From: Mobula birostris
Lineage: Eukaryota
NCBI RefSeq assembly: GCF_030028105.1
Contig: NC_092379.1
Location: 29,009,821 to 29,073,820, forward strand
DNA: 64,000 nt
Direction of reading: 5' to 3'
Below the pieces are notes generated by a model that worked only from the letters and a program-made list of their open reading frames with translations, was not told the origin of the DNA and searched no databases. Position 1 is the stretch's first letter; each line of letters starts with the position of its first letter. The position numbers and the translations under genes are program-made. Below are positions 1 through 56,129 of the stretch, piece after piece.

Positions 1-849
1 TAACTGAATCGATGCAATTATAGGACAATAATAAACACATTCCGTTCGCAATCAAGGTACATACACCAAAATACTCCATGTGGTGATTACATCGGATCCG
101 TTAAATCTGGTTGGGAAACCAGATTATACAAGTTATCACTCTGTTGTGATCCCATTTCCTCTCTTCCTTTCTCGCTCTTTCATTCTGAATATGACTTCAA
201 AATATGAGTCTTAGCGTAGTATGCGGTCGCCTATATGTATTTTAACCAAAAGTTAATTTCAACACTGAACCTCTTGCACACAGCACGGGAATACACCGAC
301 GAACATAGTATCTGCATCTCTATCACGCTAAACATCTGCAGGTTCTGTCGGATTATCTAAGCACTCCGTATAAACCATGGATAGCTGTTGTATCTTCCTT
401 AATTTCAGTGGGTTGTTAATTTCTGGGTTTCGTCAGCATGCCGCTTTCAATTCTTTGTCATTCTGGAAAACACAGTTTTGCCACCCTCTGTTTTCCATTG
501 ACCACTTTAAATATATTCCGGTGCCACTCTGTCCGTATTATTTTTCCTTGCAAACAAACGAACAAACTGGCCAAAGACAATGTCAGACAAGGCTGTCAAT
601 CGTTCTATACCCTTACAGGAAAAGAAGATGGGCGAATGCACATTGCGTTATTCAGGAAATGAATTGTAAATTTCCAGTTCGGTTGCGCCTTGCAATCAGA
701 AATTGTTCCTTTAGATTCGGTGCCTTGTGCTGCTGCTTACAGAGCTCTTAGGCATGGCACGTGACCATGGACGATTTCCGGGTGCGCCCCTTCCAGATTC
801 GCCGCGAACAGGCGCCCTCCTGTGAGAGCTTTGTGCATCATACAGGACT

Positions 850-888
850 AGTTTTTGTCCGGACCCGCCGTCTCCATACAACAATGTG
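850..888 (-). other. 23-RSS of V at 889-1308
   Basis: CACATTG + 23 nt (TTGTATGGAGACGGCGGGTCCGG) + ACAAAAACT. Confidence 0.9.
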
Positions 889-1308
889 GTACTCATTGCA
901 CAGAGATACCTGCCCGAGTCCGACACGAGAACTTCACTAATGTTCAATTGAGCCGTCTTGCTGACTCTCTGCAAACTAGCGGTAAACCGATTATTTCGAT
1001 GCATTCCTCCAGTGCTAGATACCTTCAGCAAATACTTTGGCGGTTCTCCACTATGTTGAATGTACCAAAAGCTATATGCAGCATCGTCAGTGTAATTACA
1101 GTTCAGTGTAATGTTCTGTCCTTCCTTGGCCGTTAAGTCGGGAGGATCCTGCGTTACTGAATCTTTCCCACTCGCTCCTGCAATAAAGGACAGAATACAT
1201 CAACAACGCCGGCTTGTATTGAACGCCGGGGAAATTCGCTGGCCATCTTCGCAGAAACTCACCAGGCAGCACAGCCAATGCGATCATTAATAAACAGAGG
1301 GAAATCAT
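889..1308 (-). CDS. TCR alpha/delta-like V segment, family A, intact (leader 1263-1308, V exon 889-1177)
   Basis: Leader MISLCLLMIALAVLPG with GTGAGT donor and TTGCAG acceptor. Open V exon ASGKDSVTQDPPDLTAKEGQNITLNCNYTDDAAYSFWYIQHSGEPPKYLL...SDSGRYLCAMS with both Cys and the Trp. Followed directly by a 23-RSS. Confidence 0.9.
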
Positions 1309-2629
1309 GGTGCCTAATTTCTGGCTGAATCCAACGGCAGATGCCTTCCAGGACGTGATTATCACTCAATAGATATTGGGGTGTGAGGCCTTTTCAGCGA
1401 TACCTTTCACCTTATGTAATAGCAGGAGCGTTTTCCTGGTTAAAGGACTTGGCTGACACGATAAACCGAGACTTTGTGAGCACCAATCAGAATCTGTTTT
1501 TCTCATACGTCATTCTGCCTGTTTCTCCGCTATTTCAATGCCCCGCGTTCCTCTCTCTCTCTCACTCTCTCGCTCGCTCGCTCTCTCTCTCTCTCGTTCT
1601 TTCTCTGTCTGCCCTACTGCCTTTGTTACCCGGTTATCTGCAGAATCGCAACATATTCAAACACTTATCAAAGTGTAATCATACTCAATTAGGCACTTTC
1701 CACATGGTCGTTTCTTCGACATCGACAGTATCCCGCTAGAAGTAGCTCATTTATTTATTTGTTTGTTTAGTTAGTTATTCGGTGATATATCCCACAATAA
1801 TCCCTTAGTTCAACATTTTTCAATCTTCCGGCATTGAACTAGTTATTCAATGCCAGCAAGTGTTCATCTAGTTTTCGTTTGCTGTTGCGGAGCCAATCTG
1901 CTATCCACGCCAATAGACTCCTGAAAGCACACTTTGCGTCGCCAGCGCTCTCTTCGTTCAAAAAAAAATAGTCACATTTGCATGCCCCTTGTAATTATTT
2001 CCAATCGCATTAAATTATCGTAACCTCGCATTAGCCATTTCCACACTTATGTCAAAGCGCTGATTGTCCTCTCTATCTATGCCTCTGGACATATTATACA
2101 CAGTTATTAAGTTACCCCTCATCTTCTTCCTCTACAGAAAGAAAGGACCTTGTTCGCAGAAACTGAGGTGACCGGTGGAAGAAACAGGCATTTGCGATGT
2201 GTAACTGAAGTTGAGCATTACGATTCCTCTTCCTTTAATTGTTGATGCAGAGAGCCAGATCTTTCCCACACGCTTTCATAGAAGAAGGATGAAATAACTG
2301 AACATCAAGTGCTCTCATTGCACCTGCGAAACACCCACTGACTACTTAGGAAAAGAATCGCCAGGCAGCTTAGACGATATAATCAGTAAGGGTCAAGGAC
2401 GCACATGGCGTCTGCTCTCACGCACGTTCTTAAGCAGATAACAAGAAGCTGATACCACAGATTTGCGAGAATTATGTCAGATACACTACACCCTTCACTT
2501 CGTGGAAAACCTCCTTAATTTGTTCTTCTAACTGGAAGTTCAACCTTGGAAGTCAGAGCTGAGCCTATTTAACCACCGACATGCATGTTACTAATACACT
2601 CTCTGTTTATTTATCAGTCACTCACTTTC

Positions 2630-3335
2630 ATTCAGGTGCCTTGCCGTTCGGCGTTGGCGATCATGTCTCTCCTTCCATCACAGTCCCTGACCTCCAAATT
2701 GTAATTTTTGCCTGCCCTGTTTCTAACCATGATGTTATTCCATCTATCATTTTCATTCTCTGTCTCGCCCTGCTTCTCTTTCTTCCAGTTTTCCAGTTGT
2801 AACTAAATGATCTAATGTCTATCTTCGGATGATGTGTCCAAAGAATTTTGATTGATGTTTTCTGATTTTTAAGTAATGTATGTTTTCTTTTCGTTCTCTG
2901 TAGAGCTTCTTCGTTGGTAAATCCGTCCGTATATGATATGCATAGCATTTTTCTGAGGAACCACATCTCTGCTGCAATGATTCTATCTCCAATTGCATTT
3001 GTGATGGTCCATGACTCGCTACCATACACCAATATAGGGCGAATTTAGTAACTAAGAGTTGTAAGACGGATGTCAGTTGCTGTTTTCTTGTTCGTTAGAA
3101 TGTTTCTGATTTCTCTAAATGCTGTTCTTGCCATTGCTATTCTTGCTTTTATGTCTGTTTCGCATTTGCCATCAGATGTTACCCATGATCGAAGGTACTA
3201 GAAGTAGTGAACATGTTTCAGGATTTCATTTCCCAATAGGATCCTACAGTTTGGGATATCAGGTTTATTTGATATTACCATTACTTCGGCTTTCTTTTTG
3301 TTTAAGGTTCGTCCAAGTCTTTCGCTGTCTGTGTT
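2630..3335 (-). mobile_element. RTE-clade LINE, 3' fragment, disabled
   Basis: Minus strand translates, with stops, to LNKKKAEVMVISNK...YLRSWVTSDGKCETDIKARIAMARTAF...YGSESWT...AAEMWFLRKMLCISYTD, the typical RTE RT C-terminus. Absent from the paralogous blocks. Confidence 0.8.
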
Positions 3336-4027
3336 GAAGGTAGATCATTCACTCTAACTATATTCTGTTTGTCAATCTCACTTTTCCCTTTTTCGTTCTA
3401 CTTTAATAAACACTTCATTTCTTGCAACGAATCTCGGTCTTTGTTCCCTATTCTGTTACTGTCCTATATTTCCGTCGCTATGTCAGTCAATGTCTCCCAG
3501 TCTGCCTCTGTATTCCAATTTTACTAAATCATCAATGTACAAACGTAACTTAAAACTTGTTGAGGGAACTTCCTTTCAACCAACGCCAGTCCATTCGGTA
3601 TTAATTTGCAATTCGTAAAATAAACATCCATTTATCTGAAATTTTAGGACGCTAATGTCAACAGACACAACCTGCAATTTATTTTCATCACAAGCATTCG
3701 GTGTGACAGCATGTCGAATGCTATCTAGTTATATACACCCTCAGTATCTCTAGACTGCAATCATCTTCACTGTTAATACCTCGAGGTAGTGAAAAATGAA
3801 GTCTAGCAAAAAATTAACCACAAGATATTCTTGGAGGCAACAGAGCGACATGGATACCGCAATATAGTAGAAATACTTCGGAAAGCCGCCACAATTTCCC
3901 TAGGTAAATCTAAATTCAAGAAGTGTTCCACAAGTTGGGTCACATTTTGTTGCTGAATGCGGCATTTCAAATCGACCGCGTGATTTTCATGCTTTCTGCG
4001 TACAGCTGTTCCAGTTCCGCGGCAAAA

Positions 4028-4042
4028 GGCGCCCTCTAGTGA
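4028..4042 (-). promoter_or_regulatory. CTCF-consensus motif downstream of the V RSS
   Basis: TCACTAGAGGGCGCC, 13/14 match to CCASYAGRKGGCRS. Binding is inferred, not shown. Confidence 0.6.
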
Positions 4043-4093
4043 CTACGCAACGCTGGACTTTTTACAGACCCGCTGTTTCCCTACAACACTGAG

Positions 4094-4519
4094 GGGTCCT
4101 TTATACAGAGGTACTGTATACACTTGAGTCCTGGACAAGAATTCCAGAGATACTTGAATGAGCTGACCCTGCCTCTGTGCATTACAACTGTAAACCTCGC
4201 CCGACATTCCGAGGCTGCTGCAGTTTTACTCAGCGATATAGCTACAGCAGTCTTTAGGACATACTCTGCGATGCTGAGTGTATCAAATATGTTTGTCTTA
4301 GTTCGTGTGCAACTGCATTTCAGTGTTATCGTCTGACTTCCGTCAGCCGATAATTCAGGAGCATCCTGATCACAGAATTGTACTTTCTCGTTCCTGCAAT
4401 AAAGGACAGAATGGAGTGACTTCCCTGACTTGCACCGAACTACGCTCTCACTGGTCATGTGTGCAGTATTTTAGCTGTCCGGATGGCGAATGAAACCTGT
4501 AAGAAACGGAGGGACACAT
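4094..4519 (-). pseudogene. V pseudogene, family B
   Basis: Frameshifted leader (ATG 4517-4519) with donor mutated to CT. Acceptor at 4394. V-like DAPELSADGSQTITLKC with frameshifts and lost Trp. Degenerate RSS (CTCAGTG). Confidence 0.8.
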
Positions 4520-4728
4520 ATTCACACGCTTCAGCCCCGATAGGATCACAAATCACTTACAAGAATTTATCAACATGACAGATAATGGAGAGTAAAACGT
4601 ATCAGAAGTAGAGAGAATGGTGCAATGCCCAACGATTGCAAGATTAAACCAGAACAAAGGCTATATGAGAACTAGTCAGAACAGAATCCAGTTACGTTGA
4701 AAGCCCCATTTGGCCTTTTCACACGCTA

Positions 4729-4732
<4 letters not shown>

Positions 4733-4794
<62 letters not shown>

Positions 4795-4830
4795 ACTCTC
4801 TCTCTCACCTCTCTCACTTCCTCTCTCTCT
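4733..4830. repeat. (CT)n microsatellite
   Basis: Pure TC dinucleotide run of about 55 nt, then an interrupted run. Confidence 0.95.
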
Positions 4831-5319
4831 CTTCCCCACTTTCCTTCACTTTCCTCTCCCCTCTCCCCACTCTGCCTCCGGCCATCTATTTATTTATTTA
4901 GCTTTCTCTCTTTATCTCCGTCTCTCCTTCTCACTCTCTTGTTCTCTCCCTGCCTACTCCTCTCTCTCTTGTTCTCACTCCGGATATTGATTTATATTTT
5001 GGTATTTATCAACATGGTTGAACGCTCTAATAACTCACTCTCGCTTTCTTTGCCATTCTGCCCCTGCTCTATCCTTTTTCACACCATGTCACTCCATGCT
5101 AACCAGCGTTATCTGCGACAATTCCGACGAGTCATGCGCAGAATTATGACTTTCCACTGTTGCTGTTATCTAACTTATTATTAGCTTTTTAAGTTATTGA
5201 CAGAAAACCATTCAATCTTCCAGAACCCCGTTGGAAATTTCTTGTCAATAGCACATCAAATATCTATTCCCATAGACGAGCTGGGATTAGATGTTTAACG
5301 GACGAGGAAGGCTCCGCCT

Positions 5320-5782
5320 AGAGCAGGCAGACATTGCGAACATTGAGGTGTCCAGATCCTGTATCGCCGTGGAATGTTGATGCTGAACTGCGCAAAGCTA
5401 TTCAGTGGATTCCGGCACGATTCCCCCGAACTTATTTAAGCGGAACATCTTTTCCCAGAGACCCGGAATATTACTGGATTGTCTTCACGTAGAACAATAT
5501 TCCTGTCATGAATATTTTCATCGGTTTTCCAGAATATTGCGCGCGCGACAAATAGGTTCTGCCAGATTCCAAGTAACTGCATCTAATTGACAAGGTTTGC
5601 CCTTCCACGGTCATTATATCTCTCTTTCTGAGGTTCACAAAATCTACCTCACTCGTCCCTGTATCAAACCCCGAAGGTGTGAGGGGCGCCTAAACGCAGT
5701 GACCTTGGAGCGAACGCTCTGACGGCTTCGCCGGATTCACCAAACAGAGTAGTAAGTACAAAGAACATCGCAGTGGGAACAT
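5320..5782 (-). pseudogene. Decayed V pseudogene, family D
   Basis: Leader-like exon 5741-5782 with GTGAAT donor and acceptor at 5659. Exon reads GTSEVDFVNLRKRDIMTVEGQTLSIRCSY...QYSGKP, with stops and the Trp lost. Homologous to the plus-strand copy at 16250-16735. Confidence 0.7.
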
Positions 5783-6322
5783 GGTAATTTGAATAAAATA
5801 AACAGAGGAAGATTTGAAGACGGTACTCAAATAAAACAGAAGTTACTCAAGTAAGTACAACAAGCGGCTTTCCGGGAGACTCGGCGCTTTCGTTTCGATG
5901 TATATTCGTCTCACCTCTCTCTTCCTGTGTTCCTATGAGAGAGTTTACTGCCGATTGCTGTCAGGGATATTGGAATTAAAAGAATGCTTGACTGTAACAT
6001 CGAAACAGCGACTGCTGTCTCCTCTCTCGCTTTCGAACAAGCCATATCAGACTCTCCCTGGTTAGTGTGAGAGACAGAACGCCTGTGGGGCAAAGAAATG
6101 ATGCAGTAAACAGCTATTTTTTCCTGTACTGCAGGCCAAGCCTCTCCTTGTACTTTTGCGGTGACTTCGACGGTGGTTGGTGGTGGAAATGCTAATGCTT
6201 TATATTACAATGAGTGAGAGAAGTAGAAGCTGGTTAGGTTAATGCAGCTGGCCGCTGATTTTGCGAGAGATGTGGCAGTGGGCGTTCAGATTCTTACCTT
6301 CTTTTCTGACATAGATGCTTTG

Positions 6323-6790
6323 GGTTTTTGTTCTGTATTAAAGATATCTGTGGAGACTATACATTTCAGGTTTTGTATTGTGTCCATTCTTCGATTTTAA
6401 ACGTAACCGAAAAGCATGCTGGGCATTCTTTTCGCAGTACTCTGGTATATCTGACAACAGCAAAATATATGATAAACCAGTATGGGGTAACTGTAAGCGT
6501 CAGCAAAGTGAAGGAGTACATCAGTCCGTCTTTCATTAGTTCATAAAATATCGGTTGAGCGGGGAAGTGGCGGTAGTTGTGTACTGCAGAGTGCCTATAG
6601 TGGCACCTTGGTGATATCTGGTGTTATTTCACCATGGATCCGGTTGGATTCTGAAAATTTCGATGCTGTCAGCAAATATTTCTGTGCTCGGTTTCCACAT
6701 TTTGCACGTTACCAAATATTACACTGCCCGCAGAAGACTTTCCGGGTAGCATGTGCCCGTGATCGGAGGATCACTGAGTGTGTACGTTAA
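6323..6790 (-). pseudogene. Highly decayed V relics (one or two segments) with a shortened RSS
   Basis: Fragments NIW*...QKYLLTA and KECPACFSV align to family FR2/FR3. Ends in CACAGAT + 14 nt + ACAAAAACC. Paralog at about 49700-50170. Confidence 0.45.
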
Positions 6791-8124
6791 GAGGAATGTG
6801 CGACAATTGGGCCGATAAATCAGTTGACCATAAGACCATAAGTATCAAAGAACTGAATTAGTCCACTTGACCTATCGAGTCTGCTCCACCATTTCAGATG
6901 AGACAGTGTGGCAATAGAACTTTTCGGCACCATAAACATATAATTAATATAATTGGTTCAAAAATAGTCGAAATAGACCTTTGGAAACAGAAGCTATCAC
7001 TGTGTGCTCCCTCGATAGTAACCGGACGTTCCCTCTCTTTGTCTCTTCGATGGTGAGCTGATTCAAAGTTCCAAAAGAAGCAATAGATTATTTCCTTTGC
7101 AAGTGTATTAAACGGCAGGATGAAACTGAATCTCAATCCCATCCACCTCTGTATGACCTTGCTCTTTAGTTCCTGCCTGCGCTGCATTTTTATACGGCCC
7201 TTACAATTGATTTTTGCATTATTTTATTGTTTAACTTTGTACTACCTCCATAAGGGGTGTATTGAATTCATCTGTAAAAACAGAATCAAGGCGATCATGT
7301 GACAGTAATAAATAAATTCCTATCCAATTTGCATATGTAGAGAACTTCACGTGGCGGTAACATTAGATCACTTAAGTCTGGTTGGGAAACCAGATTATAT
7401 AAGCAATCACCCTGTTATGATCCCATTCCCTCTCTCCTCCCTCGCTCTCTTTTAGACTGCAAATGCCTTCAAAAATATGAATCTCGGAGTCGTATGCGAT
7501 CACGTACATGTAGTTTAATCATAAATTCACTTTAAGTATTGAACCTCTTTCTCACAGCAACGACCAAAATAGTATCTGCATTCTCTATCACGCTAAGCAT
7601 CCGCAGGCTGTGTCGCATCATCTGAATTCTCAAAATACACAATAAGTAGTTTTTTTTTCCAACATCCTGACTTTCATTAGCGTGCCACTTGTAATTCCTT
7701 ATCAATCTGAAAACCACAAACTTGCACACCATCTATTCTCCTTAAGTCAGTCATTGTGTCATTTAAATATATCCCGAATCCACTCCGTTCTCATTATTTC
7801 TCACTGCAGACACTCAAACAAAGGGCCATAAGACAATGTCAGGCAAGGGTCTCAATGGGGATATGCCGTTGCAGCAACAGAGCGTAGGTGAATGCACATT
7901 CCGATATCCCGGAAAGTTGTGTAATTCCAGTTTGGGTCCGCGTTGTAATCAGCAACAGTTCCTTTAGATTCGGCGTCTTGTGCTCTTAGGTAGGATACGT
8001 GACCATGGCTGATGGGGCACCCCTTCGAGTTTCGTCGCAAAAGGACGCCTTCCAGTGAAAGCTTTTAGCATTATACAGGACCCACTTTTTGTTTGGAGAT
8101 CCGCCGTCACCGTACAACAGTGTG

Positions 8125-11732: not shown

Positions 11733-11948
11733 GACAACCACAAGATATTGTGATAGGCAACAGAGTGACACCTAGACACCGAGATATAGTGGAAATGCTT
11801 CGGAAAGCTTCTGCAATATCCTTAGTTAAACCGGAATTCAAGAAGTGTTCCTCAATGTTGTGCGCATTTTGGTGCTCAATGCAGCGTTTTAAGTTGATCA
11901 CGTGATCTTTATACTTTGTGCGTCTCGCTGTACCGGTTTCCCAGCAAA

Positions 11949-11963
11949 GGCGCCCTCTGGTGA
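11949..11963 (-). promoter_or_regulatory. CTCF-consensus motif (belongs to the V pseudogene at 12654-13058, displaced by a Penelope insertion)
   Basis: TCACCAGAGGGCGCC, 13/14 match to the consensus. Confidence 0.6.
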
Positions 11964-11979: not shown

Positions 11980-12605
11980 TCGGAACACGCTGGAGAAACT
12001 TAGCAGGTCGGGCAGCAACTGTGAAAAGATCGGTCGACTTTTTCGGCCGGAACCCTTCGTAAGGACTGTAGATAGAAGGGGCAGAGGCCTTATAAATAAG
12101 GTGGGGGGAGAGTGGGAAGGAGAAGGCTGGTAGGTTCCAGGTGAAAACCAGTAAGGGGAAAACTATGGGGTGGGGGAGAGGAAGCAAGGAGATAATAGGC
12201 AGGAAAGGTGAAGAAAGAATAGGGGAAAACACCATGGGTAGTAGAAGGAGGCGGATCCATGAGGGACGTGATAGGCAGCTGGGTTGAGGGGGCAGAGTGA
12301 CATAGGGATAGGGGAAGGGAGGGGGAGAGAATTACCGGAAGTTGGAGAATTCTATGTTCATACCAAGGGGCTGGAGACTACCTAGAAGGCATATGAGGTG
12401 TTGCTCCTCCAACCTGAATTTAGCCAGATGAGGCTAAACTCAGGTTGAAGGAGCAACACCTCACATACCGTTTAGGTAGTCTCCAGCCCCTTGGTCCGAA
12501 ACGTCGACCGATCTTTTCCACGGATGCTGCCCGACCTGCTGAGATCCTCCAGCGTGTTGTGAGTGTTGCTTTGACCGTAGCATTTGCAGATTATTTTGTG
12601 TGTAC
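11980..12605. mobile_element. Penelope-like element 3' end in fold-back (inverted) configuration
   Basis: Minus arm encodes RLEEQHLICLLGSLQPLGMNIEFSNFR* (PLE GIY-YIG ORF terminus), then the UTR and a degenerate hammerhead. Plus arm repeats the ORF end and the terminus. Hairpin at the inversion centre 12411-12446. Confidence 0.75.
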
Positions 12606-12653: not shown

Positions 12654-13058
12654 GGGTCCATTGCACGGTGGTATACGCCAGAATCTGGCACAAGAACTTC
12701 AGTGATATTTAAATAGCTGACTATGCCTTTGTGTATATCAGCTTTGAACCTCGCTGAGTATTTTGGAGGCTGCTCCAGCTTTCCTGAACCATATACGTTC
12801 AGCAGTAATATTTCGAGATTTGCCACGATACAGAGTGTATCAAAAATGTTTGCATTAGTTCGTGTGTAATTGCAATTCAGTGTGATGATCTGACTGACGT
12901 CAGCCGTTAATTTAGGAGCATCCTAGATCACTGACTGTTTTTACCCTCGTTCCTACTTTAAAAGACTGAATGCAGTAATATTCCTAACTTACACTGAACT
13001 CATGTTTCACTCCTTGGTCATATGTACAGCATCTTACCTGTCAGGATGGCAAATGTAC
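12654..13058 (-). pseudogene. V pseudogene, family B, leader truncated by CR1
   Basis: Leader remnant TFAILTG with GTAAG donor at 13037. Exon from 12952 has a TAG in SVI*D. The second Cys is mutated to Arg (VYHRAM). Degenerate heptamer, nonamer ACAAACTCC at 12614-12622. Confidence 0.85.
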
Positions 13059-16249: not shown

Positions 16250-16735
16250 ATGTTGCCGATACAACTACCCTATGGAGTTTCTTTTTTATCGGTTTTTCTA
16301 CCTGTTGAATCTGTCTACTCTGTTGGAGCGTGTCCTGCAGGGTCAGTGCGTTCCTGCACCGCTCAAACATTTGAGGTTTGTAACAGGGACGAGCGGTGCA
16401 GATTTTGTAACTCCAATAGGAGGGATTTAATGACCTTGGAAGGGCAGACGGTGTCATTGTGCTGCAGTAACTTGCAATCTGGCGGAGCCTATTTGTTGTG
16501 CGTTCAATATTCTGGAAAACCGACAAAAGCATTCATGAGTGGAGATATTGGTCTAGACGAAGGCAGATCGGTCAGGATTTCGGGTCTCTGTACAAAAATG
16601 GCAGGTGTTCCGCTTAATTATGCTCGGGGGGATTCTGATGGACTTCACCGAATAGCATCGCGCAATTCCGTACATAACGTTCCACGGCAATAGAGGATCC
16701 GGACACCAGAGTGTTCTCAGTGCTTGCTTGCTCTA
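16250..16735 (+). pseudogene. Inverted V pseudogene, family D (plus strand)
   Basis: Acceptor GTAACAG|GG at 16386/16387, then GTSGADFVT...DLMTLEGQTVSLCC...QYSGKP. Intron and exon align with the reverse complement of 5320-5740. Confidence 0.7.
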
Positions 16736-18439
16736 ACGGGTGCCATCGCTGTTCCCTCAACATTCAATTCCAACTCACCATGGGGCGAAGACGTCATCGC
16801 ATTCTCCCTCCGGAGGAGATCCTCAAGGCTGCAGCAACGAGGGATACGGTCTGCAAAGCACTACCACCTCTCCTCCGAGCAAATTCTGCCGTCTTTCTCT
16901 CTACTGTCAGTGGCATGACGCTAATGTATGGGTTCAGATGTGCAATAGAGTAAGCCGGAGTAAGATGAGGATAAATGAAAACAGTGTGTTGTGACAGAGG
17001 AGCGGACAGAAGGAATTCGAGAGAAATTAGTGAGAAACGAAAAGCGAGATAGCCAAAGAAATATGGAGAGCGAAATATGGTGAAGGGCAAGAGAAAGTGA
17101 ATAAATGCGGGAGAGCGACACAGAGGGAGAGAGAGAAAAATGATGCCAAAGAGAGGGAAATAGAAGAAAGAGTAAAGAGATATAGGAGGAGGGCGAGAGA
17201 GAAGTAGGAAAAAGAGGAGGGAGCGGGAACGGCTAGAGTGGGGAAAGGAGGGAGCTTGGATTGATATCGAGAGAAAGACTAGCTGGGAGGGGAGTGGGGA
17301 AGGAGAAGCACGACACAGGGAAGGATAAAGCAGGAAAGAGAGGAGAAAAAGCACGTGAGGAAAGAGTCAGTGAGAAGGAAAGAGGACCACTTTCAGTAGC
17401 AAAATGTGCTCAAGATTGAGGAACGTTTCTCGAAATTAATGCGTGCTGAGAGATACAAATGTTATTTTTATAAAGAACGGCCAGTGCAATTTGATGTTCT
17501 TGTCACTATACTTTTTACCCTCAACGTCATATCGCAGTTGGCAATTTTGCTGGACTTGTTTTTGACACTTTAATACTCTTCATTGAAGAATTCCCAGTGA
17601 GGATAGGAGCGGAATGAGGAAAGAATGAGGCCGTGAGATTGAAAGATAAAAAAGAGAGGGAGCGATAAAGAGATAGAGAGGGAGGTAAAGAAAGGGAGAG
17701 AGAAGGATTGACAGAAACGTATTTTAAAAAGAGTGCCAAATTCATTGCAGCTTAATCTGACAGCGAGGTATAACGGGTTCGAGGTTGACCCAGATGGAGT
17801 CGGAATTGTTTTATTTTTGCCAAGTATTCTGAGATACAAGGAAATACTGTCTTGAAATGTCTTGTTCATACCCATCGATTTATTACACAGTGCAACGTGG
17901 TTGAAAAAGGGAAACAATATCAGGAAGCAAATTAAAGTGCAACATCTTCCGAAAAATGTAGAGCAGAGAGACTATAAAGCGTAAAGACATAACAAGGAAA
18001 ACTGTGGTATGGGTCAATATTTCATCCCATCGCGACATTCAATAGTGCCATACCACCAGGCGGAAGACATTCTTTATGCCGTTCTACTTTATTTCAGGGT
18101 ATTGCATCTTCGGATTTCTGGGAGAGGGAGCGGCGAATACGCCCGGTTTTCTGCCGAAGGGTTGCAGAAATTTTAAGCATACGGATGCTTAAATTGATTC
18201 TTCTCAATTTTTTTCAACAATCCTCATTTTTATTTTATGTTTGCCGTTATTCACATCGCCCAGTTTATTTCCCTATCACGAATTTCACGGCGTTTTCAAC
18301 CAGATCTCCTTTCTAATCGTGACCAGCTATGAACCAGTGCGACTAACTTGCAGAGGAACTGAATACATATTTTGCATTAGTCATCAGAGTGGAAGTCATC
18401 TGCAGTATCCCGGAAACTCAAGAGTGTCAGGAAAGTAAA

Positions 18440-21960: not shown

Positions 21961-22220
21961 CACAGAATGACTAATTCTATTTCAGGTACACTGTGAATGA
22001 GTTGCATGTCTACTGTTTGGGTACATTTTGAATTCAAGAACTGTTCCAAGCCTGGACGCTTTTGCTACTCAGTTCAGCCCAATCGAACCAGTGACTCTCG
22101 CAGATCTCTGGTCACGCCACTTATAATTTCTCGGAAAAATGCACTTTTTAGTGAGCGCTCATTGCATAACCCATGGTTCATGTTTGTACAGACCCGTGCT
22201 CACCCTCCCGCAGCACTACG

Positions 22221-31378: not shown

Positions 31379-33460
31379 NNNNNNNNNNNNNNNNNNNNNN
31401 NNNNNNNNNNNNNNNNNNNNNNNNNNNNNNNNNNNNNNNNNNNNNNNNNNNNNNNNNNNNNNNNNNNNNNNNNNNNNNNNNNNNNNNNNNNNNNNNNNNN
31501 NNNNNNNNNNNNNNNNNNNNNNNNNNNNNNGTATCAGACACTTAACTCACCCAAGTCTGGTGAACCCAATTCAAATCTTCCCGCTTCAACAATTGATGAT
31601 CCACTAGCATTTGTCTTGTTTCTATTCGCCCTTTGGGGTGAATGCTGTTTACTGATAGACCGCAGTTCAACATTCCGACGATAGGCTGTTAATACCCATT
31701 GTTCTGCACCCGTGAGTTCGAATACTCAGTTCAATTTGGGTAATTTCAATTTCTACTTGCCAGGATCGGTGAAATGTATTTTCCCCACAAGTTAATAAAC
31801 CAAGGGTCAAATTCAATTTAAAATTGCGGACACCTGAAGGAGGAAATATGGAACTACAGTTCCGAACTACTCAGATGATCTGAAAATACATATGGAAAGA
31901 CAGAGTTTTCAATCCTCTTATCTACACGTTATTTTGAAGCTGTTAAAGCGCACGAGCTCTCCGTCTACAGAGTGAATTTTAAACACTGGATACTTGTTCT
32001 GATGGCCAGTGGCGAACCAGGATGAGAAAATCTAGTTATGAGTGTGCCCTCAAGTCAATATAATGACAAAAGCATTTTGTTACTGAAAGAAGTGCAACAG
32101 CGCACTCTTTTTCCAATTTCCTGAACGAGTTACAGAGATGTTTTGAGCAGGAGGAAATTACAGTGTCAACACCCACCCTGACAACCTCAATGCCACTGAA
32201 ACCACAGACACGGTTGTGAGTGCAATATTCGTCTCCAGGAGAGTGAAACAACGCAAATAATTTGGACGGATTGGTGTCGGAGGCCATGACCTTAGATATT
32301 GCACAGTTCAGCTGGCGGCTTCTTTTCAAACGTTTTGACCCTCCCATTGTTTTAACCTGATTCTCTCATCTGCCCTAAGAATACAACCATCGGATCCGCA
32401 CTTATAAAAACATTGTAACACATGACCCCGAGAATTCATTCCGATTTGCACTGATGCACAATACAATGCTCTCTATATGAAAGCATTTTCTTGCCCCAGT
32501 CTGCAAGAAACTCCAGAGTAATGGACACAATTCAATGATTTCAAACTCAAGGATTTCATACAATAATTCTGCCTATATTTTCGCCACCTGGGTAAAGCTG
32601 TCAGCAAAAGCAAACGCTTTAACCACTTCTAATATTTTCTCTTTTGGTCCACGCATAGAGAAGAAGATCCAGGGTAAAGGGCAGCACCTACCATGCCGAC
32701 ATATGCGCAATGATTTTTTTTAACTTATATTGACCTGGTTGTGACTTTGCACTTTTTCATCTACCTGCAGTGCACTTTGACTGTAGCTGCTACATTCTAT
32801 TCTGCCTCTTTCCGTTTCGCTCTTTTTCCCTCTCCCTCTCACTGCTCCCGCCTACACAGCGTGAGAAAATGACTACAGTCATAGCATCCGTAAATTACGT
32901 CATGTAACACGTAGTCCCTTTATGAGCATATCAACTTACATTATAAGTAGATGTCGTAACGTCATTTAATGTAGCGCATTCCCACCAGTCATGCACACTA
33001 ACTACCCATTTATCCCCTCTCTTTACTTTCCTTTCCTGGTCCATAGACTCTAGCTGTATCTTTATTTTGATCAGTTGCGTTTTGATGTGATCCATTCCCG
33101 TCTTGACATGTACAGTTTCGGCATTTGCAAGCTCCTCCCTCATCTTCACTGTAAGAACCTCTAAAATCTCTGCCAAAGTTGTGAAAGGCGATGTCCAGCA
33201 AAAATATCAGGCAGATAATGGATTTGTAGATAAACGGGGAAAATGGACTTCCATGTGTGGGAAATGTTCAGTAACGTTTCAGTTTGTGCAACCTGGTACA
33301 CATTCACTTGACGGATAGTTCCTTAAGCCTGCATATCTTTTGCGAATATGTTTCACATTCTTAAGTCGATCACGTGACCGTGGAGGATTTGTGTGTGAGT
33401 CCCTGGCAGTTTTCCCGCAAAGGGCTCCCACTAGTGGGCATTCATTGTATTGCGGAGGTC

Positions 33461-33499
33461 CAATTTTGTTCGGAGTCGTCATCGCCCTGCAATACTGTG
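33461..33499 (-). other. 23-RSS
   Basis: CACAGTA + 23 nt + ACAAAATTG. Confidence 0.88.
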
Positions 33500-33932
33500 G
33501 GCTTCATGACACAAAGATACACGGCGGAGACCGACACAAGAGCTCCAGAAATCTTCAAATGACCTATCTTATTGGCTTTCTCCCAACCAGCGGTAAACCT
33601 TGCCGGACATTCTGGATGCTGTTCCATTTTTCCGCTGCTATATACTAGTAGCAAATATTTTGGAGATTCCACGTGATGCTGAACGTACCAAAAAATAGTG
33701 GCAGCAATGCCACTGTAATTACAGTTCATTGTTATACTTTGTTCTTCCACAATAGTTATTTCAGTCGGCCATTGCGTCACGGAATCCTTCCCAATTGTTC
33801 CTGCCATAAGAAGACAGAATGCATGAACAGATCGATCTTTCTCCGGACAGAAGGAACAGATACAGGCCGTTACCGCGGAGACTCACCTGGCATCATAGTC
33901 AATATAATCGTCAGAGAACACAGAAAATTCAT
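33500..33932 (-). CDS. TCR alpha/delta-like V segment, family C, intact (leader 33887-33932, V exon 33500-33800)
   Basis: Leader MNFLCSLTIILTMMPG with GTGAGT donor and GGCAG acceptor. Open exon TIGKDSVTQWPTEITIVEEQSITMNCNYSGIAATIFWYVQHH...ECPARFTAGW...VSAVYLCVMK. The usual Asp before SAVY is Val. Confidence 0.88.
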
Positions 33933-35214
33933 GGTGTCTGTTTTCAATCTCAATCGAAAGGCAGTTTACTTGCTGTAAAATAAGTTAATATCCTTGACCG
34001 ATATTAACGAGTAAAATCAGACTTGCTGCATATTTCAGCTCGCGTAAAGCTGGGGGCGCTGCCACGCTAATGCATTGATTGGCTGTGAGCACCGAACTGA
34101 TCCACTAATCAGAGTTAAGCTTGTTTCAATCCTCTGGCTGTTTTTGCTTGCCTTTATAACCCTTTCTATCACGTATTTCTCCTTCGCAATGTTTCTCCAA
34201 TTTTCACTTATTTACAATCTCACTCACTTCTTACACCACTCTTTCCCACTCCTTCTTCCTTTCTGTTCCACGTCAGCGCTCTCTCTCTCTCGCTCTGTAC
34301 ATGCATTTCATCATATTCATCCATGTCCTTCCATTTTTCATTCCCTCCTGTGACACTCTTCTTCCATCGATCCTTCCTTCAGATGCACTCGCGTTGCTAT
34401 GTCCTTCCTTCCCTCTTGCTCTTTGTTTCCCTTTCTCTTGCTCTCGCTCCCTCCGTCCAGCTCTCTGTCACCCTTTTTCTATCCCGCACTCTGAACTTTT
34501 TATTTAATTAGCGGTAGATCGCGGAATAGGCCTTTCACCTCCAGCGCTCCCAGATCCTAGCGTAGCACAGCGGAATTTACAATAACTTATCAACCTACTT
34601 ATCCGTACATTTTGCACAGTACGCTGATACCGCGGAACCCGGAGAAAGCCCGGCCATTCCGAAAGGAGGACCTACAGACCCTTTACTGATGCGCAAAACG
34701 GAACACCGAAATCTATGCCGGAGCTGGAAATAGCGCCGCGCCACGACTATACTATGGTGGCTGGACTTCAATCTCTCTCTTACATTCCTCTTCGACTGAG
34801 TCTCCCATTCCCTGCTTTTCGCTCCTCCTCAGTCCCTATCTTTGCTTACTGCTCTATCGATTATCATCTCTCTCGCTCTCTTACCTCATTACTCTTACGT
34901 CTCCTATATTCACTTTCTCACTCCATCGTTCCTGACCGCCCTCTTTCTCCCCCTATTTTACTCACGATATAAGTCCCCCAACATTTCTCATAGATTTCAT
35001 TGTCTCCTCTGCTCACTCGTAAACCGCAATTCACACCTAACGCATTTCTCCCCTCCGGCAAACGGGGGACACGTCACTGATGCAGACAACAAAGAAAACA
35101 TATTCGTGGGGAGAGGGAGTGGGACATGTTGCTTTCTGTACCCATCTCGTGTCCTCTACACTTCAGCCTTTTCTCTCCAGGGAAGATGTTGTCGCCCGAG
35201 TCTCGACGGACCAG

Positions 35215-40645: not shown

Positions 40646-40784
40646 TATTTGAAATCCAGACCGATTTATTTTGCTTTTGAATATCGCCCTCTTAAGTCAA
40701 ACATGTAATTCTCGCAAATATCTGGGTGCGCCACTTCCAGTTTTCATCCAAATGCCGCCATCTGGTAGCCGTTTACTGCATCAT

Positions 40785-46680: not shown

Positions 46681-46856
46681 CCCGCAAGCAAAGCAGCTGT
46701 CCAACTAAATGAAAAATGTAGTCAGTAATTTCTCCCCTTCCCCTGGAGTTTCGCCTTCTTAAGTCAATCACGTGACAGTGGTGGATATGTGTTTGCGCCC
46801 GGCTGTTTGCCGGCAAAGTGCTCCCTCTAGCGAGCGCTCACTGTATCACGGACGTC

Positions 46857-46895
46857 GAATTTTGTCCAGAGCCAGCATCGCCTTGCAACACTGTG
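46857..46895 (-). other. 23-RSS with consensus heptamer
   Basis: CACAGTG + 23 nt + ACAAAATTC. Confidence 0.92.
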
Positions 46896-47319
46896 GGCAC
46901 CATGGCACAAAGATAAACGGCGGAATCCGACACAAGAACACCAGTGATGTTCAAATGGGCTGCCTTGCCGTCACGCTGCCAACCAGCGGTAAACCTCGCT
47001 GGATTCCGGTCCATCTGCCCACTGCTATATACCGTCAGCAAATATCTTGGAGATTCCACGCGACGCTGAACGTACCAAAAAATAGATTGAGGAACGCCAG
47101 TGTAATTACAGTTCAGTGTTACACTTTGTTCTTCCGCAATCGTTAATTCAAGAGGCCATTGCATCACCGAATCTTTCCCATTTGTTCCTGCAATAAAAGG
47201 ACAGAATGCATGCATAAATTGGACTTTCTTCATACATACGGAACAGATATAGGGCGTTACCGCAGGGACTCACCGGGCAGCATAGTCAATATAATTAGCA
47301 GATAACACAGAGATTTCAT
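46896..47319 (-). CDS. TCR alpha/delta-like V segment, family C, intact (leader 47274-47319, V exon 46896-47187)
   Basis: Leader MKSLCYLLIILTMLPG with GTGAGT donor and TTGCAG acceptor. Open exon TNGKDSVMQWPLELTIAEEQSVTLNCNYTGVPQSIFWYVQRR...SDSAVYLCAMV. Confidence 0.92.
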
Positions 47320-48264: not shown

Positions 48265-48674
48265 CTCTTTTATCTATCTCCTCTCTCCTTTGCACGGATT
48301 TCCTGTGTTTTCTTTGTTAGGCACTGTGCAATGTAAATATATCACGTTTTTAGGCAATACTTATTATTTCTCGCTGCAGACTCTCGGAGAAAGCGGCCAA
48401 AGACAATGTCAGGCAAGGTTGTTAATCGTAGTATGCCGTGGCGGCAAAAGGGAATGGGTGAGAGCACATTGTGGTATTCCGGAAATGCATTGTAAAGTTA
48501 CAGTTTAGCTGCGCATTGTAATCAGGAAATGTTCCTTTAGATTCGGCGGCTTGTACTGCTGATTCACGCACACTTAAGGAGGACACGTCACCATGGCTGC
48601 TTTCTCGGTGCGCCCCTTCCAGTTTCACGGAAAGAAGACGTCCTGCAGTGAGTGCTTTTTGAATTATAGAGGAC

Positions 48675-49100: not shown

Positions 49101-49323
49101 TGTCTAATTNNNNNNNNNNNNNNNNNNNNNNNNNNNNNNNNNNNNNNNNNNNNNNNNNNNNNNNNNNNNNNNNNNNNNNNNNNNNNNNNNNNNNNNNNNN
49201 NNNNNNNNNNNNNNNNNNNNNNNNNNNNNNNNNNNNNNNNNNNNNNNNNNNNNNNNNNNNNNNNNGATTACTGCCGATTCCCAATCGGGTATATCGGTAT
49301 AACAAGAATTACTGACTGTAACA

Positions 49324-49447: not shown

Positions 49448-51491
49448 AAGAGAGAGAGAATGCCTGTGAAACGATCAAATGTTGCAGTAAACAACTAGCT
49501 TTTGTTTTACTGTAGACCAAGCCACTCTTTGTGTCTGTGGTTGTTTCGATGGTTGTTGGTGGTGGAAATGCTGATGCTTTATGCTAGAATAAGCGAGAGA
49601 GGTAGAAGTTGGTCAGGTTAATGCTGTTTGCCGCTGATTGTGCGAGGGATGTGACAGGAGACGTTTAGGTTCTTATCTGTTTCTCCGATATTGATGCTTT
49701 GTGTTTTTGTTCTGTTTTAAGGATGTCGGTGAAAACCATAAATTTCAGGTTGTGTATTTTGTACCTTCTCTGATTTTAACCGGAACCATTAAAACAAACT
49801 GGGCATTCTTTTCGCTGTACCCTGGTACATCTGACAACAACAAATATATAATAAACATAAGCCAGTTTGATGTAACTGTGAGCGTCTGCAAAGTGAAGGA
49901 ATATGTCAGGCTGTCCTTCATTAGTTTATAGAACATGGGTTGAGCAGGAAAGTGGTGGTGGTGGTGGTGGTGGACTGCACAGCGCCTATCATGGCACCCT
50001 GGCGATATCTGGTATCATGTCCCAGGGATTCGGTTCGATTCCGACCTTCCGATGTGTCAGCGGATACTTACGTGCTCAGCTTCCACAATTCCCGAGTTGC
50101 TATGTTTTCCACTGCCCGTAAAACACGCTCTGGGTCACTCGTGCTCGTGATCCGAAGATCACTGAATGTACATGTTAAGAATTTGCGAATTTGGACAGAT
50201 AAATCAGTTGAAAATAAGATCATCAGATATAGGAACTGAATTAGGTCATTTGACCTGTCGAGTCAGCTCCGCCATTTCAGATGACAAGGTGTGGTAATGG
50301 AATTATTCGACACACTAAACATACAATTAAAATGAGATTTTCATAAGGTCGAAATATACCTTTGGAAACAGATGCTATCAGTTTGTGCTCCTTCGACTGT
50401 AACCGGACGTTTTCACTGTTTTTTTCTCTTCTATCGCTGGACAAATACAAAATTCTAAAAGCAAGTTCCCATGAAACAACAATAGACTATTCCCACTTGC
50501 AAGAGTGGAAAACTGTAGGATGAAATTGAATCTTAATCTTGGTATGACCTTCCTCTTTATTTCCTGCCTGCGCTGCATTTTTATACGTCTGTTCCACTTT
50601 ATTTATGTATCCTTTTATTGTTATATTTTCTACTATCTCGATAAGCTGTGTAGTGAATTCATCTGTATAAACAGAATCAATGCAATAATGCGACAATAAT
50701 TAACAAATTCGGTTTTCAATTTAGATATGTAGCAAGATGCTACACGTGCTGATAACATCGGATCCGTTAAATCTGGTCGGGAAACCAGATTATACAAGCA
50801 ATCACATTCCCATTCTCTCTTTCTTCCCTCGCTCTCTTTTATACTGAAAATGCCTTCAAAAATATGAATCTCAGGATAGTATGCGGTCACGTATATGTAT
50901 TTTAATCATAAATGTAATTCAAACATTGAATCTTTTTCTGACAGCCTGGAATGCAACGACCAAAATAGTATCTGCATTCTCCAACACGCTAAGCATCCGC
51001 AGGTTCTGTCGAATTATCTAAATACTCAGTATAAATCATAAGCAGCTGATGCAACATCCTTAATTTCAGTAGCATGTCACTTGCAATTACTTGTCAATTC
51101 GAAAATGACCAATTTTCACACCCTCTGTTTCCTTTAGTCAGCCATTGTGCTATTTAAATAAATCCCGGTTCCACTCCGTCCTCATTATTTCACACTGCAG
51201 GTACCTGAACAAAGTGGCCAAAGACGATGTCAAACAAGGCTGTCAATCGTGATAAGCTGTTGCAGCAAAAGACGGTGGGTAATTGTACATTCCGGATTGC
51301 AGAAAGTTATAAAGCGGAGCTTCTGTCCGCGTTGTAATCAGGAACTGCTCCTTTAGCTTCGGCGCCTTCTGCTGCTGAATGCAGCGGTCTGAATTAGGGC
51401 ACGTGACTGTGACTGATTTCTGGGGGTGCCCTCTGCAGATTCCTCGGAAAAAGGCGCCCTCCACTGAGACCTTTTTGCAATATACAGAACC

Positions 51492-51530
51492 AGTTTTTGC
51501 ACGGACACGCCGTCTCCATATAACAGTGTG
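51492..51530 (-). other. 23-RSS
   Basis: CACACTG + 23 nt + GCAAAAACT. Confidence 0.9.
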
Positions 51531-51962
51531 ATACTCATTGCACAGAGATACACAGCAGAGTCCGACACAAGAGCATCGCGGATATTCAGTTGCGACGTCT
51601 TGCTGCTTTTCTGTAAAGTAGCGGTAAACCTTTCTGGACAATCAGAATGCCGCTGCATTTCTCCTGTGCTATATAGCTTTAGCAAATAATTTGGAGGTCC
51701 TCCACTGTGTTGAATGTACCAAAAGATATATGGATCATCGTAAGTATAATTACAGTTCAGTGTTATGTTCTGTCCTTCCTTGGCAGTTACATCGGGAGGA
51801 TCCTGCGTCACTGAATCTTTCCCACTCGTTCCTGCAAGAAAGGACACAATACATCAACAACGCTGGCTTGTACTGAATGCCGGGCAAATTCGCTAGCCAG
51901 CTTCGCTAAGACTCACCAGGCAGCACAGCCAATAAGATCAGCAATGAACAGAGAGAAATCAT
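51531..51962 (-). CDS. TCR alpha/delta-like V segment, family A, intact (leader 51917-51962, V exon 51531-51831)
   Basis: Leader MISLCSLLILLAVLPG with GTGAGT donor and TTGCAG acceptor. Open exon TSGKDSVTQDPPDVTAKEGQNITLNCNYTYDDPYIFWYIQHSGGPPNYLL...DCPERF...SDSAVYLCAMS. Confidence 0.92.
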
Positions 51963-53661: not shown

Positions 53662-53809
53662 CTGGAACACGAGTTCTTGACTTGGACTGGACTGGAACAT
53701 GAAGCCTTGACGTGGACTGGACTAGAACACGAATCCTTGACGTTGACTGGACTGGAACGCGAAGCCTTGACTTGGACTAGACCGTAACACGAAACCTTGA
53801 CTTGGACTG
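53662..53809. repeat. 30-bp minisatellite inside the LTR-type element
   Basis: About 5 units of CTGGAACACGAAGCCTTGACTTGGACTGGA. The array resumes at about 54748 after the nested inserts. Confidence 0.85.
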
Positions 53810-53810
53810 T

Positions 53811-54744: not shown

Positions 54745-55567
54745 TCATGACTTGGACTGGACTGGAACACGAAACACAGAGCCGGGACCCCTCCTTGGAA
54801 ACAGGACATGGGGCCGGGACTCTACTTAGACACGTAACACAGAGCCAGGAGCGTTCTTGTGTGCAGGACATAGGGCCGGGACTCTTCTTATACATGGAAC
54901 GCTGAAAACGAAGAGACAGATCTCCACTCAAGGTAGCGGCAAACCGCCGGACCTTCCTAGCGAAGGCGAGGACACGAAGAGACAAGACCACACAACAATA
55001 GACTGTTCCTTCTATTGACGCGACAAGGCTCCAGTCTCACTCCGGCAGGTTAACTTGACGGGGATTCTGCCGAAGTCAGAGACGAGGTACAGACGAGGTA
55101 GAGACGAGGTAACTCACAGGGCATTCTGGCGGGGACGGTCCAGCCACTATCACTGGACCCCAGAGCTATTTATGTTGCCAGTCCGAGACGAGAAACAGTT
55201 GCCTTAATTAAGGCTCCCAAGGGTACAAAGGAAAAACGGAATAACCGGAGTACGGAATCCACGGAGCGGACCGTGACATCCGTAAATTGCTCTGTAAATG
55301 GGAACTGAGCTGGGGAAGTCAGAGCTGAGCCTATTTAGCCAGAGATGTGAATGGAACTACAACATTGTCAGTTTCTTAATAATTTACTCTAATTCTAATG
55401 TATTTGTCGATCTCACACTTCTGTCCTTCGTTGTACTTTAAATGGTACTTCATTTCTAGCAATGGATCGTCGTCCTTGGTCCGTCTTTCTTTACTCTCTT
55501 AAATTTACGTCACCATGTCACTCTGTGTCTGTCTCTGTATTTCAATTTAGTATTTTATTTCTCTACC

Positions 55568-55570
<3 letters not shown>

Positions 55571-55657
<87 letters not shown>
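55571..55657. repeat. (CT)n microsatellite
   Basis: Pure TC run of about 87 nt. Confidence 0.95.
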
Positions 55658-55659
<2 letters not shown>

Positions 55660-56129
55660 GTACATCCTTTTACAAGCTGCCAGACCACTCGGTATTCATT
55701 GTCATTCTGAAAAAAAAATCAATTGTTCTCCACTTTTAAGAAGCTAATGTGTTAATAGAGCGAACCTGAAATTTATCTTCATCAGAAGGATTTACATGAC
55801 AGCTTAGCCGATGCTGTCTAGTCACATGCACCCTTAGTATCTCCAGGTTGCACTCATCTTCACTGTTAATCGCTCAGGCCAATCAAAAATTATGTCCATC
55901 CAAATGTTAACCGCACAATGTTGTTATAGGCAGCAGACACACAATATTGTTATGGACACTGAGATATAGTGAAAAATGTTTCGGAAAAATGCCACAGTAA
56001 TCCGAGGTAGAGCTGAATTCAAGAAGTGTTCCTCAATGTTTGGCGCATTTCGCTGCTCAATGCAGCATTTTAAGTAGACCACGTGATCCTTATGCTTTGT
56101 GCGTGCGGCTGCTCCAGTCTCCCAGCTAA

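What the first reader, a model, noticed from the sequence alone, without database searches (positions are those of the whole stretch)
758..56087. A CACGTGA E-box 42-45 nt beyond the CTCF-like motif, perfect at all four intact V genes
Seen in the sequence (plus strand): CACGTGAC at 758-765, 33371-33378, 46769-46776 and 51400-51407, i.e. beside all four intact V genes of two families. The family B pseudogenes have CACGTGAT (11899-11906, 56080-56087). The site is mutated at other pseudogenes (CGCGTGAT 3977, TACGTGAC 7996, CACGTCAC 48584, decayed at about 40700). The central CpG is retained despite vertebrate CpG decay. Established knowledge: GTCACGTG is the USF1/2 (also TFE/MITF) site, and CTCF plus USF make up the chicken HS4 insulator. 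Inference: RSS-CTCF-E-box is a composite module combining a loop anchor with a chromatin-opening or barrier element at each recombination signal.
Basis: partly seen in the sequence, partly recalled or inferred. Interest (0 to 1): 0.75.

Follow-up and report, generated by a model that had tools for sequence, protein, structure and literature searches.

The report
Conserved E-box behind ray TCR V genes
In a manta-type ray, each working T-cell-receptor V gene has the same 8-letter protein-docking motif (GTCACGTG) about 130 bases past its cutting signal; it is better kept than the signal itself, so it is probably a control site, but what binds it is untested.

Summary
Observation confirmed. The window is a TCR alpha/delta-type V array with all V genes on the minus strand. 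There are 11 copies of one layout: V, heptamer, 23-nt spacer, nonamer, 23-24 nt, CTCF-like core, 44-47 nt, then the E-box. All four intact V genes (two families) carry GTCACGTG. Two of the seven pseudogenes that keep the layout still have CACGTG.

The motif is not merely inherited with the duplication unit:
- Across the four intact genes it is the only non-coding 8-mer shared in 1.5-kb units.
- It is the longest invariant run in the flank (8 columns; the next longest is 3; P about 0.008).
- It is the slowest-evolving 7/8-mer by parsimony and by likelihood site rates, ahead of the CTCF-like core and the RSS.

CpG observed/expected is 0.64 across the window and 0.7-1.1 in the flanks.

Interpretation partly supported. 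A selected class-B E-box is likely, with flanks that fit USF or MiT/TFE factors and not MYC/MAX. Binding, barrier function and opening of chromatin are untested.

The motif is absent at the homologous position in three little-skate V genes. The whole module is absent from the shark and frog V genes I checked.

First-reader notes of this scan (s1-145321, s1-146258) report the same motif elsewhere in this locus. I found no paper that describes it.

The parts
758..765 (-). E-box GTCACGTG (V-sense) behind intact family A V gene (V exon about 889-1166)
   Evidence: RNA contigs show this V spliced (intron 1177-1261) and ending at the V end.
811..825 (-). CTCF-like core TCACAGGAGGGCGCC (12/15 to CCASYAGRKGGCRSY), 24 nt past the nonamer and 47 nt before CACGTG
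850..888 (-). 23-RSS of the V gene next to 758 (heptamer CACATTG 882-888, nonamer ACAAAAACT 850-858)
33371..33378 (-). E-box GTCACGTG behind intact family C V gene (V exon 33502-33789); CTCF-like core 33423-33437; RSS 33461-33499
46769..46776 (-). E-box GTCACGTG behind intact family C V gene (V exon 46901-47176); CTCF-like core 46819-46833; RSS 46857-46895
51400..51407 (-). E-box GTCACGTG behind intact family A V gene (V exon 51533-51820); CTCF-like core 51453-51467; RSS 51492-51530
11899..11906 (-). E-box ATCACGTGAT (palindromic TCACGTGA) of a family B pseudogene; CTCF-like core 11949-11963 (14/15). The V exon lies at 12659-12940, separated from the core by an inserted element of about 600 nt.
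56080..56087 (-). E-box ATCACGTGGT of a family B pseudogene (V relic 56191-56471); CTCF-like core 56130-56144 (14/15)
3977..3984 (-). Mutated E-box (ATCACGCG in V-sense) of a family B pseudogene; CTCF-like core 4028-4042 (14/15)
7996..8003 (-). Mutated E-box (GTCACGTA in V-sense) of a family A pseudogene
48584..48591 (-). Mutated E-box (GTGACGTG in V-sense) of a family A pseudogene that has lost its RSS; its 5' part runs into the gap at 49110
40667..40768 (-). Decayed module (E-box position reads TTACATGT) behind a pseudogene
22028..22160 (-). Decayed module (E-box position reads GTCACTGG) behind a pseudogene

Best explanation
GTCACGTG is a selectively maintained class-B E-box. It forms the far end of a control module of about 130 bp attached to each V-gene recombination signal: heptamer, 23-nt spacer, nonamer, 23-24 nt, CTCF-type core, 44-47 nt, E-box.

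Most likely a bHLH-leucine-zipper dimer binds it. USF1/2 is the best guess and MiT/TFE factors are the alternative. It would sit on the side of the CTCF-type site that faces away from the RSS.

Proposed action: together with the CTCF-type factor, it keeps the stretch from heptamer to E-box free of a nucleosome and marked by active histone modifications. That stretch is shorter than one nucleosome. USF sites recruit H3K4 methylation and acetylation, and RAG2 reads H3K4me3. The RSS would therefore stay usable.

Shown here: the motif, the fixed geometry, the excess conservation, and its tie to intact V genes. Inferred: which protein binds and every downstream step.
For: - Eleven modules, all behind V genes and all in one orientation.
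- Identity between intact family A and family C genes: E-box 1.00, CTCF core 0.67, RSS 0.68, V exon 3' part 0.70, flank beyond 0.42-0.47.
- Only non-coding 8-mer shared by the four intact 1.5-kb units.
- Longest invariant run, P about 0.008.
- Fewest parsimony steps, with all changes in pseudogene copies, and lowest likelihood site rate.
- CACGTG is perfect in 4 of 4 intact genes against 2 of 7 pseudogenes with a module.
- G at -5 and T at -4 are invariant at intact genes. This fits USF and MiT/TFE and not MYC/MAX (established motif knowledge).
- The USF site of chicken HS4 is required for H3K4 methylation and H2B ubiquitination, separately from the CTCF site (PMC3140996).
- Conserved open-chromatin elements directly behind the RSS are known for mouse VH8 genes (PMC10390877).
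- RSS-linked CTCF sites at fixed spacing are known for mouse and human VH genes (PMC6746451).
- At least one module-bearing V gene is expressed as spliced, rearranged-type RNA.
Against: - No binding, accessibility or methylation data exist for this animal.
- Only four intact genes in two families, so the statistics rest on few independent lineages.
- Three little-skate V genes keep a near-consensus or perfect CTCF core and an alignable flank, but read TGAAGTG or TCAAGT at the E-box position. The site is lineage-restricted or dispensable there.
- The bamboo-shark and frog V genes checked lack the whole module.
- Many proteins bind CACGTG (BHLHE40, CLOCK/BMAL1, HES/HEY, MAX partners).
- Two pseudogenes keep perfect sites, so the link to V function is not strict.
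- Other flank islands are also conserved (CTTAAG 5 nt on, AGCAGCACAA, AGGAAC). The E-box may be one part of a larger element.
Confidence: 0.55

Rival explanations
1. The E-box is functional but belongs to a V-proximal enhancer or non-coding-transcript promoter, like mouse V8E or PAIR elements. It would be bound by another CACGTG reader (BHLHE40, CLOCK/BMAL1, HES/HEY, TFE3) and would not act as a USF-type barrier working with CTCF.
For: Several further conserved islands flank it: CTTAAG at n5, AGCAGCACAA and AGGAAC. Mouse VH8 genes have conserved open-chromatin enhancers directly behind the RSS. Family A copies read CACGTGCC, which also suits HES/HEY-type factors (my own knowledge).
Against: RNA contigs of the same species cover the V exon but give almost no depth over 401-800, so no stable transcript of the flank was seen. 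This is weak evidence: the tissue is unknown and these are contigs. The invariant GT before CACGTG is the USF and MiT/TFE signature.
Confidence: 0.22
2. No function. The 8-mer was inherited with the duplicated V unit and has survived by chance or through a local low mutation rate.
For: All copies descend from one ancestral unit. The whole CTCF-to-E-box stretch is fairly conserved (0.57-0.61). The sample is small. Skate copies lack it.
Against: The flank beyond the module is saturated between families (0.42-0.47), yet the 8-mer is identical in four genes. P is about 0.008 for a run that long anywhere in the flank, and it ranks first by two phylogeny-aware measures. It holds a CpG, which should mutate faster, not slower. 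First-reader notes report the same motif up to 450 kb away in the locus (unchecked).
Confidence: 0.1
3. The site is part of extended CTCF recognition, or a docking site for a CTCF or cohesin co-factor, and not an independent transcription-factor site.
For: Spacing to the core is fixed within 3 nt, and the site lies on the 3' side of the core, where the CTCF N-terminus meets cohesin (established structural knowledge). The stretch in between is also conserved.
Against: Known CTCF side motifs lie within about 10-20 bp of the core, not 44-47 nt away (my own knowledge; PMC3368268 describes a 33/34-mer). The skate copies have a near-consensus or perfect core and no E-box. At intact genes the E-box is better kept than the core itself (11-13 of 15).
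Confidence: 0.05
4. CACGTGN is a cryptic RSS heptamer. It would be a RAG-related decoy or secondary signal about 120 nt from the true RSS.
For: It begins with CAC. A-rich stretches lie about 23-26 nt further on in some family B and C copies (read). Another window's first-reader note mentions an RSS-like motif about 110 bp from a V RSS (unchecked).
Against: The conserved letters are the palindrome plus the GT before it, not CAC plus a nonamer. The nonamer-like stretches are poor and vary in spacing, and family A has none.
Confidence: 0.03

Closest known systems
RSS-associated CTCF-binding elements of mouse and human proximal VH genes (PMC6746451)
   Same: A same-orientation CTCF-type core at a fixed short distance past the nonamer (17-19 bp in mouse VH, 23-24 nt here). 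It is conserved about as well as the RSS and favours functional genes.
   Different: No conserved CACGTG partner is described there. Here the locus is TCR alpha/delta-type in a ray, and at intact genes the E-box is better conserved than the CTCF-like core.
Chicken beta-globin 5'HS4 insulator (CTCF footprint II plus USF footprint IV plus VEZF1 sites; PMC3140996, PMC2795164)
   Same: A CTCF site and a USF-type E-box lie within one nucleosome-sized element. In HS4 the USF site directs H3K4 methylation, acetylation and H2B ubiquitination.
   Different: HS4 is a single domain boundary, not a repeated gene-segment appendage. It needs three VEZF1 G-string sites, which were not evident here by eye. 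Barrier activity is untested here.
V8E elements and PAIR elements of the mouse distal Igh region (PMC10390877)
   Same: Family-specific, conserved regulatory DNA immediately downstream of a V-gene RSS that promotes V recombination locally.
   Different: V8E and PAIR are enhancer-like, tied to Pax5-dependent activation in pro-B cells. PAIR E-boxes are of the E2A type (my own knowledge), not CACGTG. No sequence relation to this module.

Membership tests
USF-type class-B E-box | Core hexamer CACGTG | tested here: met
   Perfect in 6 of 11 modules, including all four intact V genes.
USF-type class-B E-box | Flank preference GTCACGTG (T at -4, G at -5) | tested here: met
   GTCACGTG is invariant at the four intact genes. 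T at -4 is invariant in all 11 aligned copies. The preference itself is recalled knowledge.
USF-type class-B E-box | Binding by USF1/USF2 in vitro or in vivo | not testable with these tools
   No ChIP or EMSA data for this species.
MiT/TFE CLEAR element | Full palindrome GTCACGTGAC | tested here: not met
   The second flank reads CC, AT or GT. No copy has the 10-mer. Three copies have TCACGTGA.
HS4-type compound insulator | CTCF site and USF site within about 250 bp | tested here: met
   At motif level only: core to E-box is 44-47 nt.
HS4-type compound insulator | VEZF1 G-string sites | not tested
   By eye the longest G run between core and E-box is GGGG. No formal scan was run.
HS4-type compound insulator | Barrier or enhancer-blocking activity | not testable with these tools
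   Needs reporter assays.
RSS-associated CTCF-binding element | CTCF-consensus core at fixed distance past the nonamer, with one orientation throughout | tested here: met
   23-24 nt past the nonamer. Match is 11-14 of 15 against a chance best of mostly 9-10 in 80-nt windows. All are on the V-sense strand.
RSS-associated CTCF-binding element | CTCF occupancy | not testable with these tools
   No ChIP data.
V8E-type post-RSS enhancer | Open chromatin immediately downstream of the RSS, with flank conserved within the V family | tested here: inconclusive
   Flank conservation is met. Open chromatin is not testable here.

The most novel reading that the evidence does not exclude
Ray TCR V genes carry their own accessibility element. 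A USF/TFE-type E-box is held at a fixed distance from an RSS-linked CTCF site. It seeds H3K4 methylation and a nucleosome-free gap over the RSS, and it is selected as strictly as the RSS. On this reading, V-gene choice in this lineage is set segment by segment by a two-factor module that has not been described in mammals.
Probability: 0.25. Interest if true: 0.7.

Novelty: new variant of a known kind. Interest (0 to 1): 0.5.

Why it matters
How each V gene is made available to the RAG recombinase is only partly understood, and almost all data come from mouse antibody loci. A second short element that is more conserved than the RSS, locked to an RSS-linked CTCF-type site in a cartilaginous fish, gives a concrete target for experiments. 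Candidate tests are EMSA, ATAC or ChIP in thymus, and V usage against motif status. It would show whether barrier-type bHLH-ZIP factors take part in V-gene accessibility, and whether such modules arise repeatedly in evolution.

Tried and rejected
- Word-index protein search with the V exon found nothing. The full HMMER search gave mostly fused multi-V gene models.
- Only one close batoid locus could be fetched, little skate L002. P0056 and P0150 were not on record.
- Read laying on 1-6000 with three related species showed that their contigs pile up over 601-1400, so the flank is multi-copy and conserved there. The table of differences was truncated (2467 rows not shown), so the state of the E-box in those species could not be read. 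The first attempt returned busy.
- A V-exon tree meant to date the family splits against the skate-manta split was unresolved (support 26-51). I cannot say whether skates lost the E-box or the manta lineage gained it.
- The CpG-retention argument was rejected as weak.
- The cryptic-RSS reading was rejected (see rivals).
- The CACGTGAC at 63041 has no V gene, CTCF core or module homology and counts as a chance hit. The hit at 33670 lies in V-exon framework 2.
- Literature searches found no description of an E-box or USF site linked to an RSS, or of CTCF sites at cartilaginous-fish TCR loci, in the library searched.
Full report
**What the window is.** Scan notes name the genome as a manta-type ray. 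The window holds an array of V segments, all on the minus strand. Their products read like TCR alpha/delta V domains (...FWYIQHSGEPPKYLL...YLCAMS), and each is followed by a 23-spacer RSS. tblastn and translation find four intact V exons: 891-1166, 33502-33789, 46901-47176 and 51533-51820. They belong to two families, called A and C here. There are also seven pseudogenes with a recognisable downstream flank, and a few older relics. RNA-type contigs of the same species match the first V exon exactly. They splice out its leader intron (1177-1261) and stop at the V end, so that gene is in use.

**The observation.**
- CACGTGAY gives 11 strand-hits against 2.4 expected by chance.
- Nine of the hits come from six V-flank sites. 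The other two (33670 in an exon, 63041 an orphan) match the chance expectation.
- In V-sense the layout is heptamer, 23 nt, nonamer, 23-24 nt, a 15-nt CTCF-type core, 44-47 nt, CACGTG.
- A profile of the module finds 11 copies on the minus strand, each behind a V gene, plus one partial inverted relic at 17387-17442.
- The three assembly gaps are 0.5-1.8 kb from the nearest module. None interrupts a module, and I did not fill them.

- *Invariant runs.* In a MAFFT alignment of the 11 flanks, 24% of flank columns are invariant among the four intact genes. The longest invariant run is GTCACGTG (8 columns) and the next longest is 3. Column shuffling gives a run of 7 or more in 0.8% of trials.
- *Parsimony.* On a tree of the copies, TCACGTG takes 7 Fitch steps over 7 columns against a flank mean of 2.7 per column. 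That is tied first of 281 windows, and all changes map to pseudogene copies.
- *Likelihood.* IQ-TREE site rates also rank GTCACGTG as the slowest 8-mer, just ahead of the CTCF-type core.
- *No alignment needed.* It is the only non-coding 8-mer shared in colinear position by all four 1.5-kb V units. The other shared 8-mers all lie in the V exon.
- *Identity by region,* intact family A against intact family C:

| Region | Identity |
|---|---|
| E-box | 1.00 |
| V exon, 3' part | 0.70 |
| RSS | 0.68 |
| CTCF-like core | 0.67 |
| Core-to-E-box stretch | 0.61 |
| Nonamer-to-core spacer | 0.45 |
| Flank beyond the E-box | 0.42-0.47 |

- *Intact against pseudogene.* CACGTG is perfect in 4 of 4 intact genes and 2 of 7 pseudogenes with a module. 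Three pseudogenes carry single changes (CACGCG, CACGTA, GACGTG) and two are decayed.

The window's CpG observed/expected ratio is 0.64, and the V flanks are at 0.72-1.14. Keeping one CpG is therefore not remarkable here. The CTCF-like cores at the intact genes are only 11-13 of 15 to the consensus, while the family B pseudogenes have 14 of 15. At working genes the E-box, not the core, is the best-kept element.

**Other species.**

| Locus | Species | V genes seen | CTCF-type core | E-box position |
|---|---|---|---|---|
| L002 | Little skate, Leucoraja erinacea | 3 | Near consensus or perfect (CTCTAGAGGGCGC, CACTAGAGGGCGCC) | TGAAGTG or TCAAGT, in a flank alignable to family B or C |
| L004 | Bamboo shark (from the accession) | 2 | None | None |
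| L001 | Frog (from the accession) | 12 | None | None |
| L005 | Probably a bony fish | 15 distinct V segments | CCACCAGAGGGAGCC about 40 nt past the nonamer in 12 of them; farther out in three | None |

Species names for L001, L004 and L005 are my recollection from the accession numbers. A V-exon tree could not order the family splits against the skate-manta split, so gain in the manta lineage and loss in skates both remain open. Contigs of three related species cover the module region at 80-90% likeness and in many copies. The truncated tables did not let me read the E-box itself in those species.

**What it most likely is.**
- *Factor.* The invariant G and T before CACGTG fit USF1/2 and MiT/TFE factors and argue against MYC/MAX (established knowledge, not tested here). 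The full CLEAR palindrome is not present.
- *Position.* The E-box lies on the 3' side of the core. From structural knowledge, that is the side where the CTCF N-terminus meets cohesin. The RSS lies on the other side.
- *Size.* The heptamer-to-E-box span is about 130 bp, less than one nucleosome.
- *Precedents.* In chicken HS4 the USF site, separately from the CTCF site, is required for H3K4 methylation, acetylation and H2B ubiquitination (PMC3140996). RAG2 binds H3K4me3 (my own knowledge). RSS-linked CTCF sites and conserved post-RSS regulatory elements are documented for mouse Igh (PMC6746451; PMC10390877).
- *Favoured reading.* A bHLH-zipper factor and the CTCF-type factor jointly hold the RSS in open, H3K4-methylated chromatin. 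Only the sequence facts are shown. The factor and the mechanism are inferred.

**Rivals.** These are an enhancer or promoter role with another CACGTG reader, chance survival, an extended CTCF or co-factor site, and a cryptic RSS heptamer. They are weighed in the Rival explanations section.

**Novelty.** I found no paper that describes an RSS-linked CACGTG element or CTCF sites in cartilaginous-fish TCR loci. Within this scan, first-reader notes s1-145321 (adjacent window) and s1-146258 (450 kb away, written as CTTAAG-n5-CACGTGAC) report the same module. I confirmed that CTTAAG-n5 arrangement in this window. Follow-up notes on the CTCF-like sites (s1-145193, s1-145196) agree with the 23-24 nt spacing and with a batoid-restricted distribution.

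Noticed in passing
window 11990-12600: An inserted element of about 600 nt, with internal inverted repeats, sits between the RSS remnant of the pseudogene V at 12659-12940 and its CTCF-like core at 11949-11963. The core (14/15) and the palindromic E-box are still perfect although cut off from the V gene.
   Followed up: partly
L005 (assembly GCA_011823955.1), 15 distinct V segments: TCR-alpha-like V genes of what looks like a bony fish. Twelve of the 15 distinct V segments carry a CTCF-type motif (CCACCAGAGGGAGCC/T) about 40 nt past the nonamer; three have CCACTAGAGGGCC farther out. None has a CACGTG partner.
   Followed up: partly
L002:2142-2230, 3509-3560, 6662-6750 (Leucoraja erinacea): Skate V genes have a near-consensus or perfect CTCF-type core behind the RSS and a flank alignable to manta families. 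The E-box position reads TGAAGTG or TCAAGT. One copy has a SINE-like insertion with the target duplication AACTTAAGTAAACT just past it.
   Followed up: partly
window 2600-3400: A very high-copy repeat, with depth in the thousands in all three related species and in the RNA-type run. Contigs of relatives join 2612 to 3344, skipping 731 nt. This copy therefore looks like an insertion absent from their orthologous site.
   Followed up: no
window, 697-742 nt upstream of each E-box in V-sense (e.g. 34070-34115): The promoters of all four intact V genes share CAGCCAA (a CCAAT box), GGTGCTC and TCTGATT in the same order.
   Followed up: no
window 16424-17442 (+ strand): An inverted V-like relic, related to the relic at 5507-5644. 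It is followed by a GA-rich low-complexity tract, a CACGTG at 17352 and a partial inverted copy of the module tail at 17387-17442.
   Followed up: partly
window, 5-70 nt beyond each E-box (e.g. 690-752): Further conserved islands in the flank: CTTAAG 5 nt after the E-box, AGCAGCACAA about 25-35 nt on (as few parsimony steps as the E-box, but with gaps in two copies), and AGGAAC about 55 nt on.
   Followed up: partly
window 890-1262: RNA-type contigs match the V exon next to 758 exactly from 893 upward. They splice out 1177-1261 (GT..AG on the minus strand) and give almost no depth over the post-RSS flank.
   Followed up: yes
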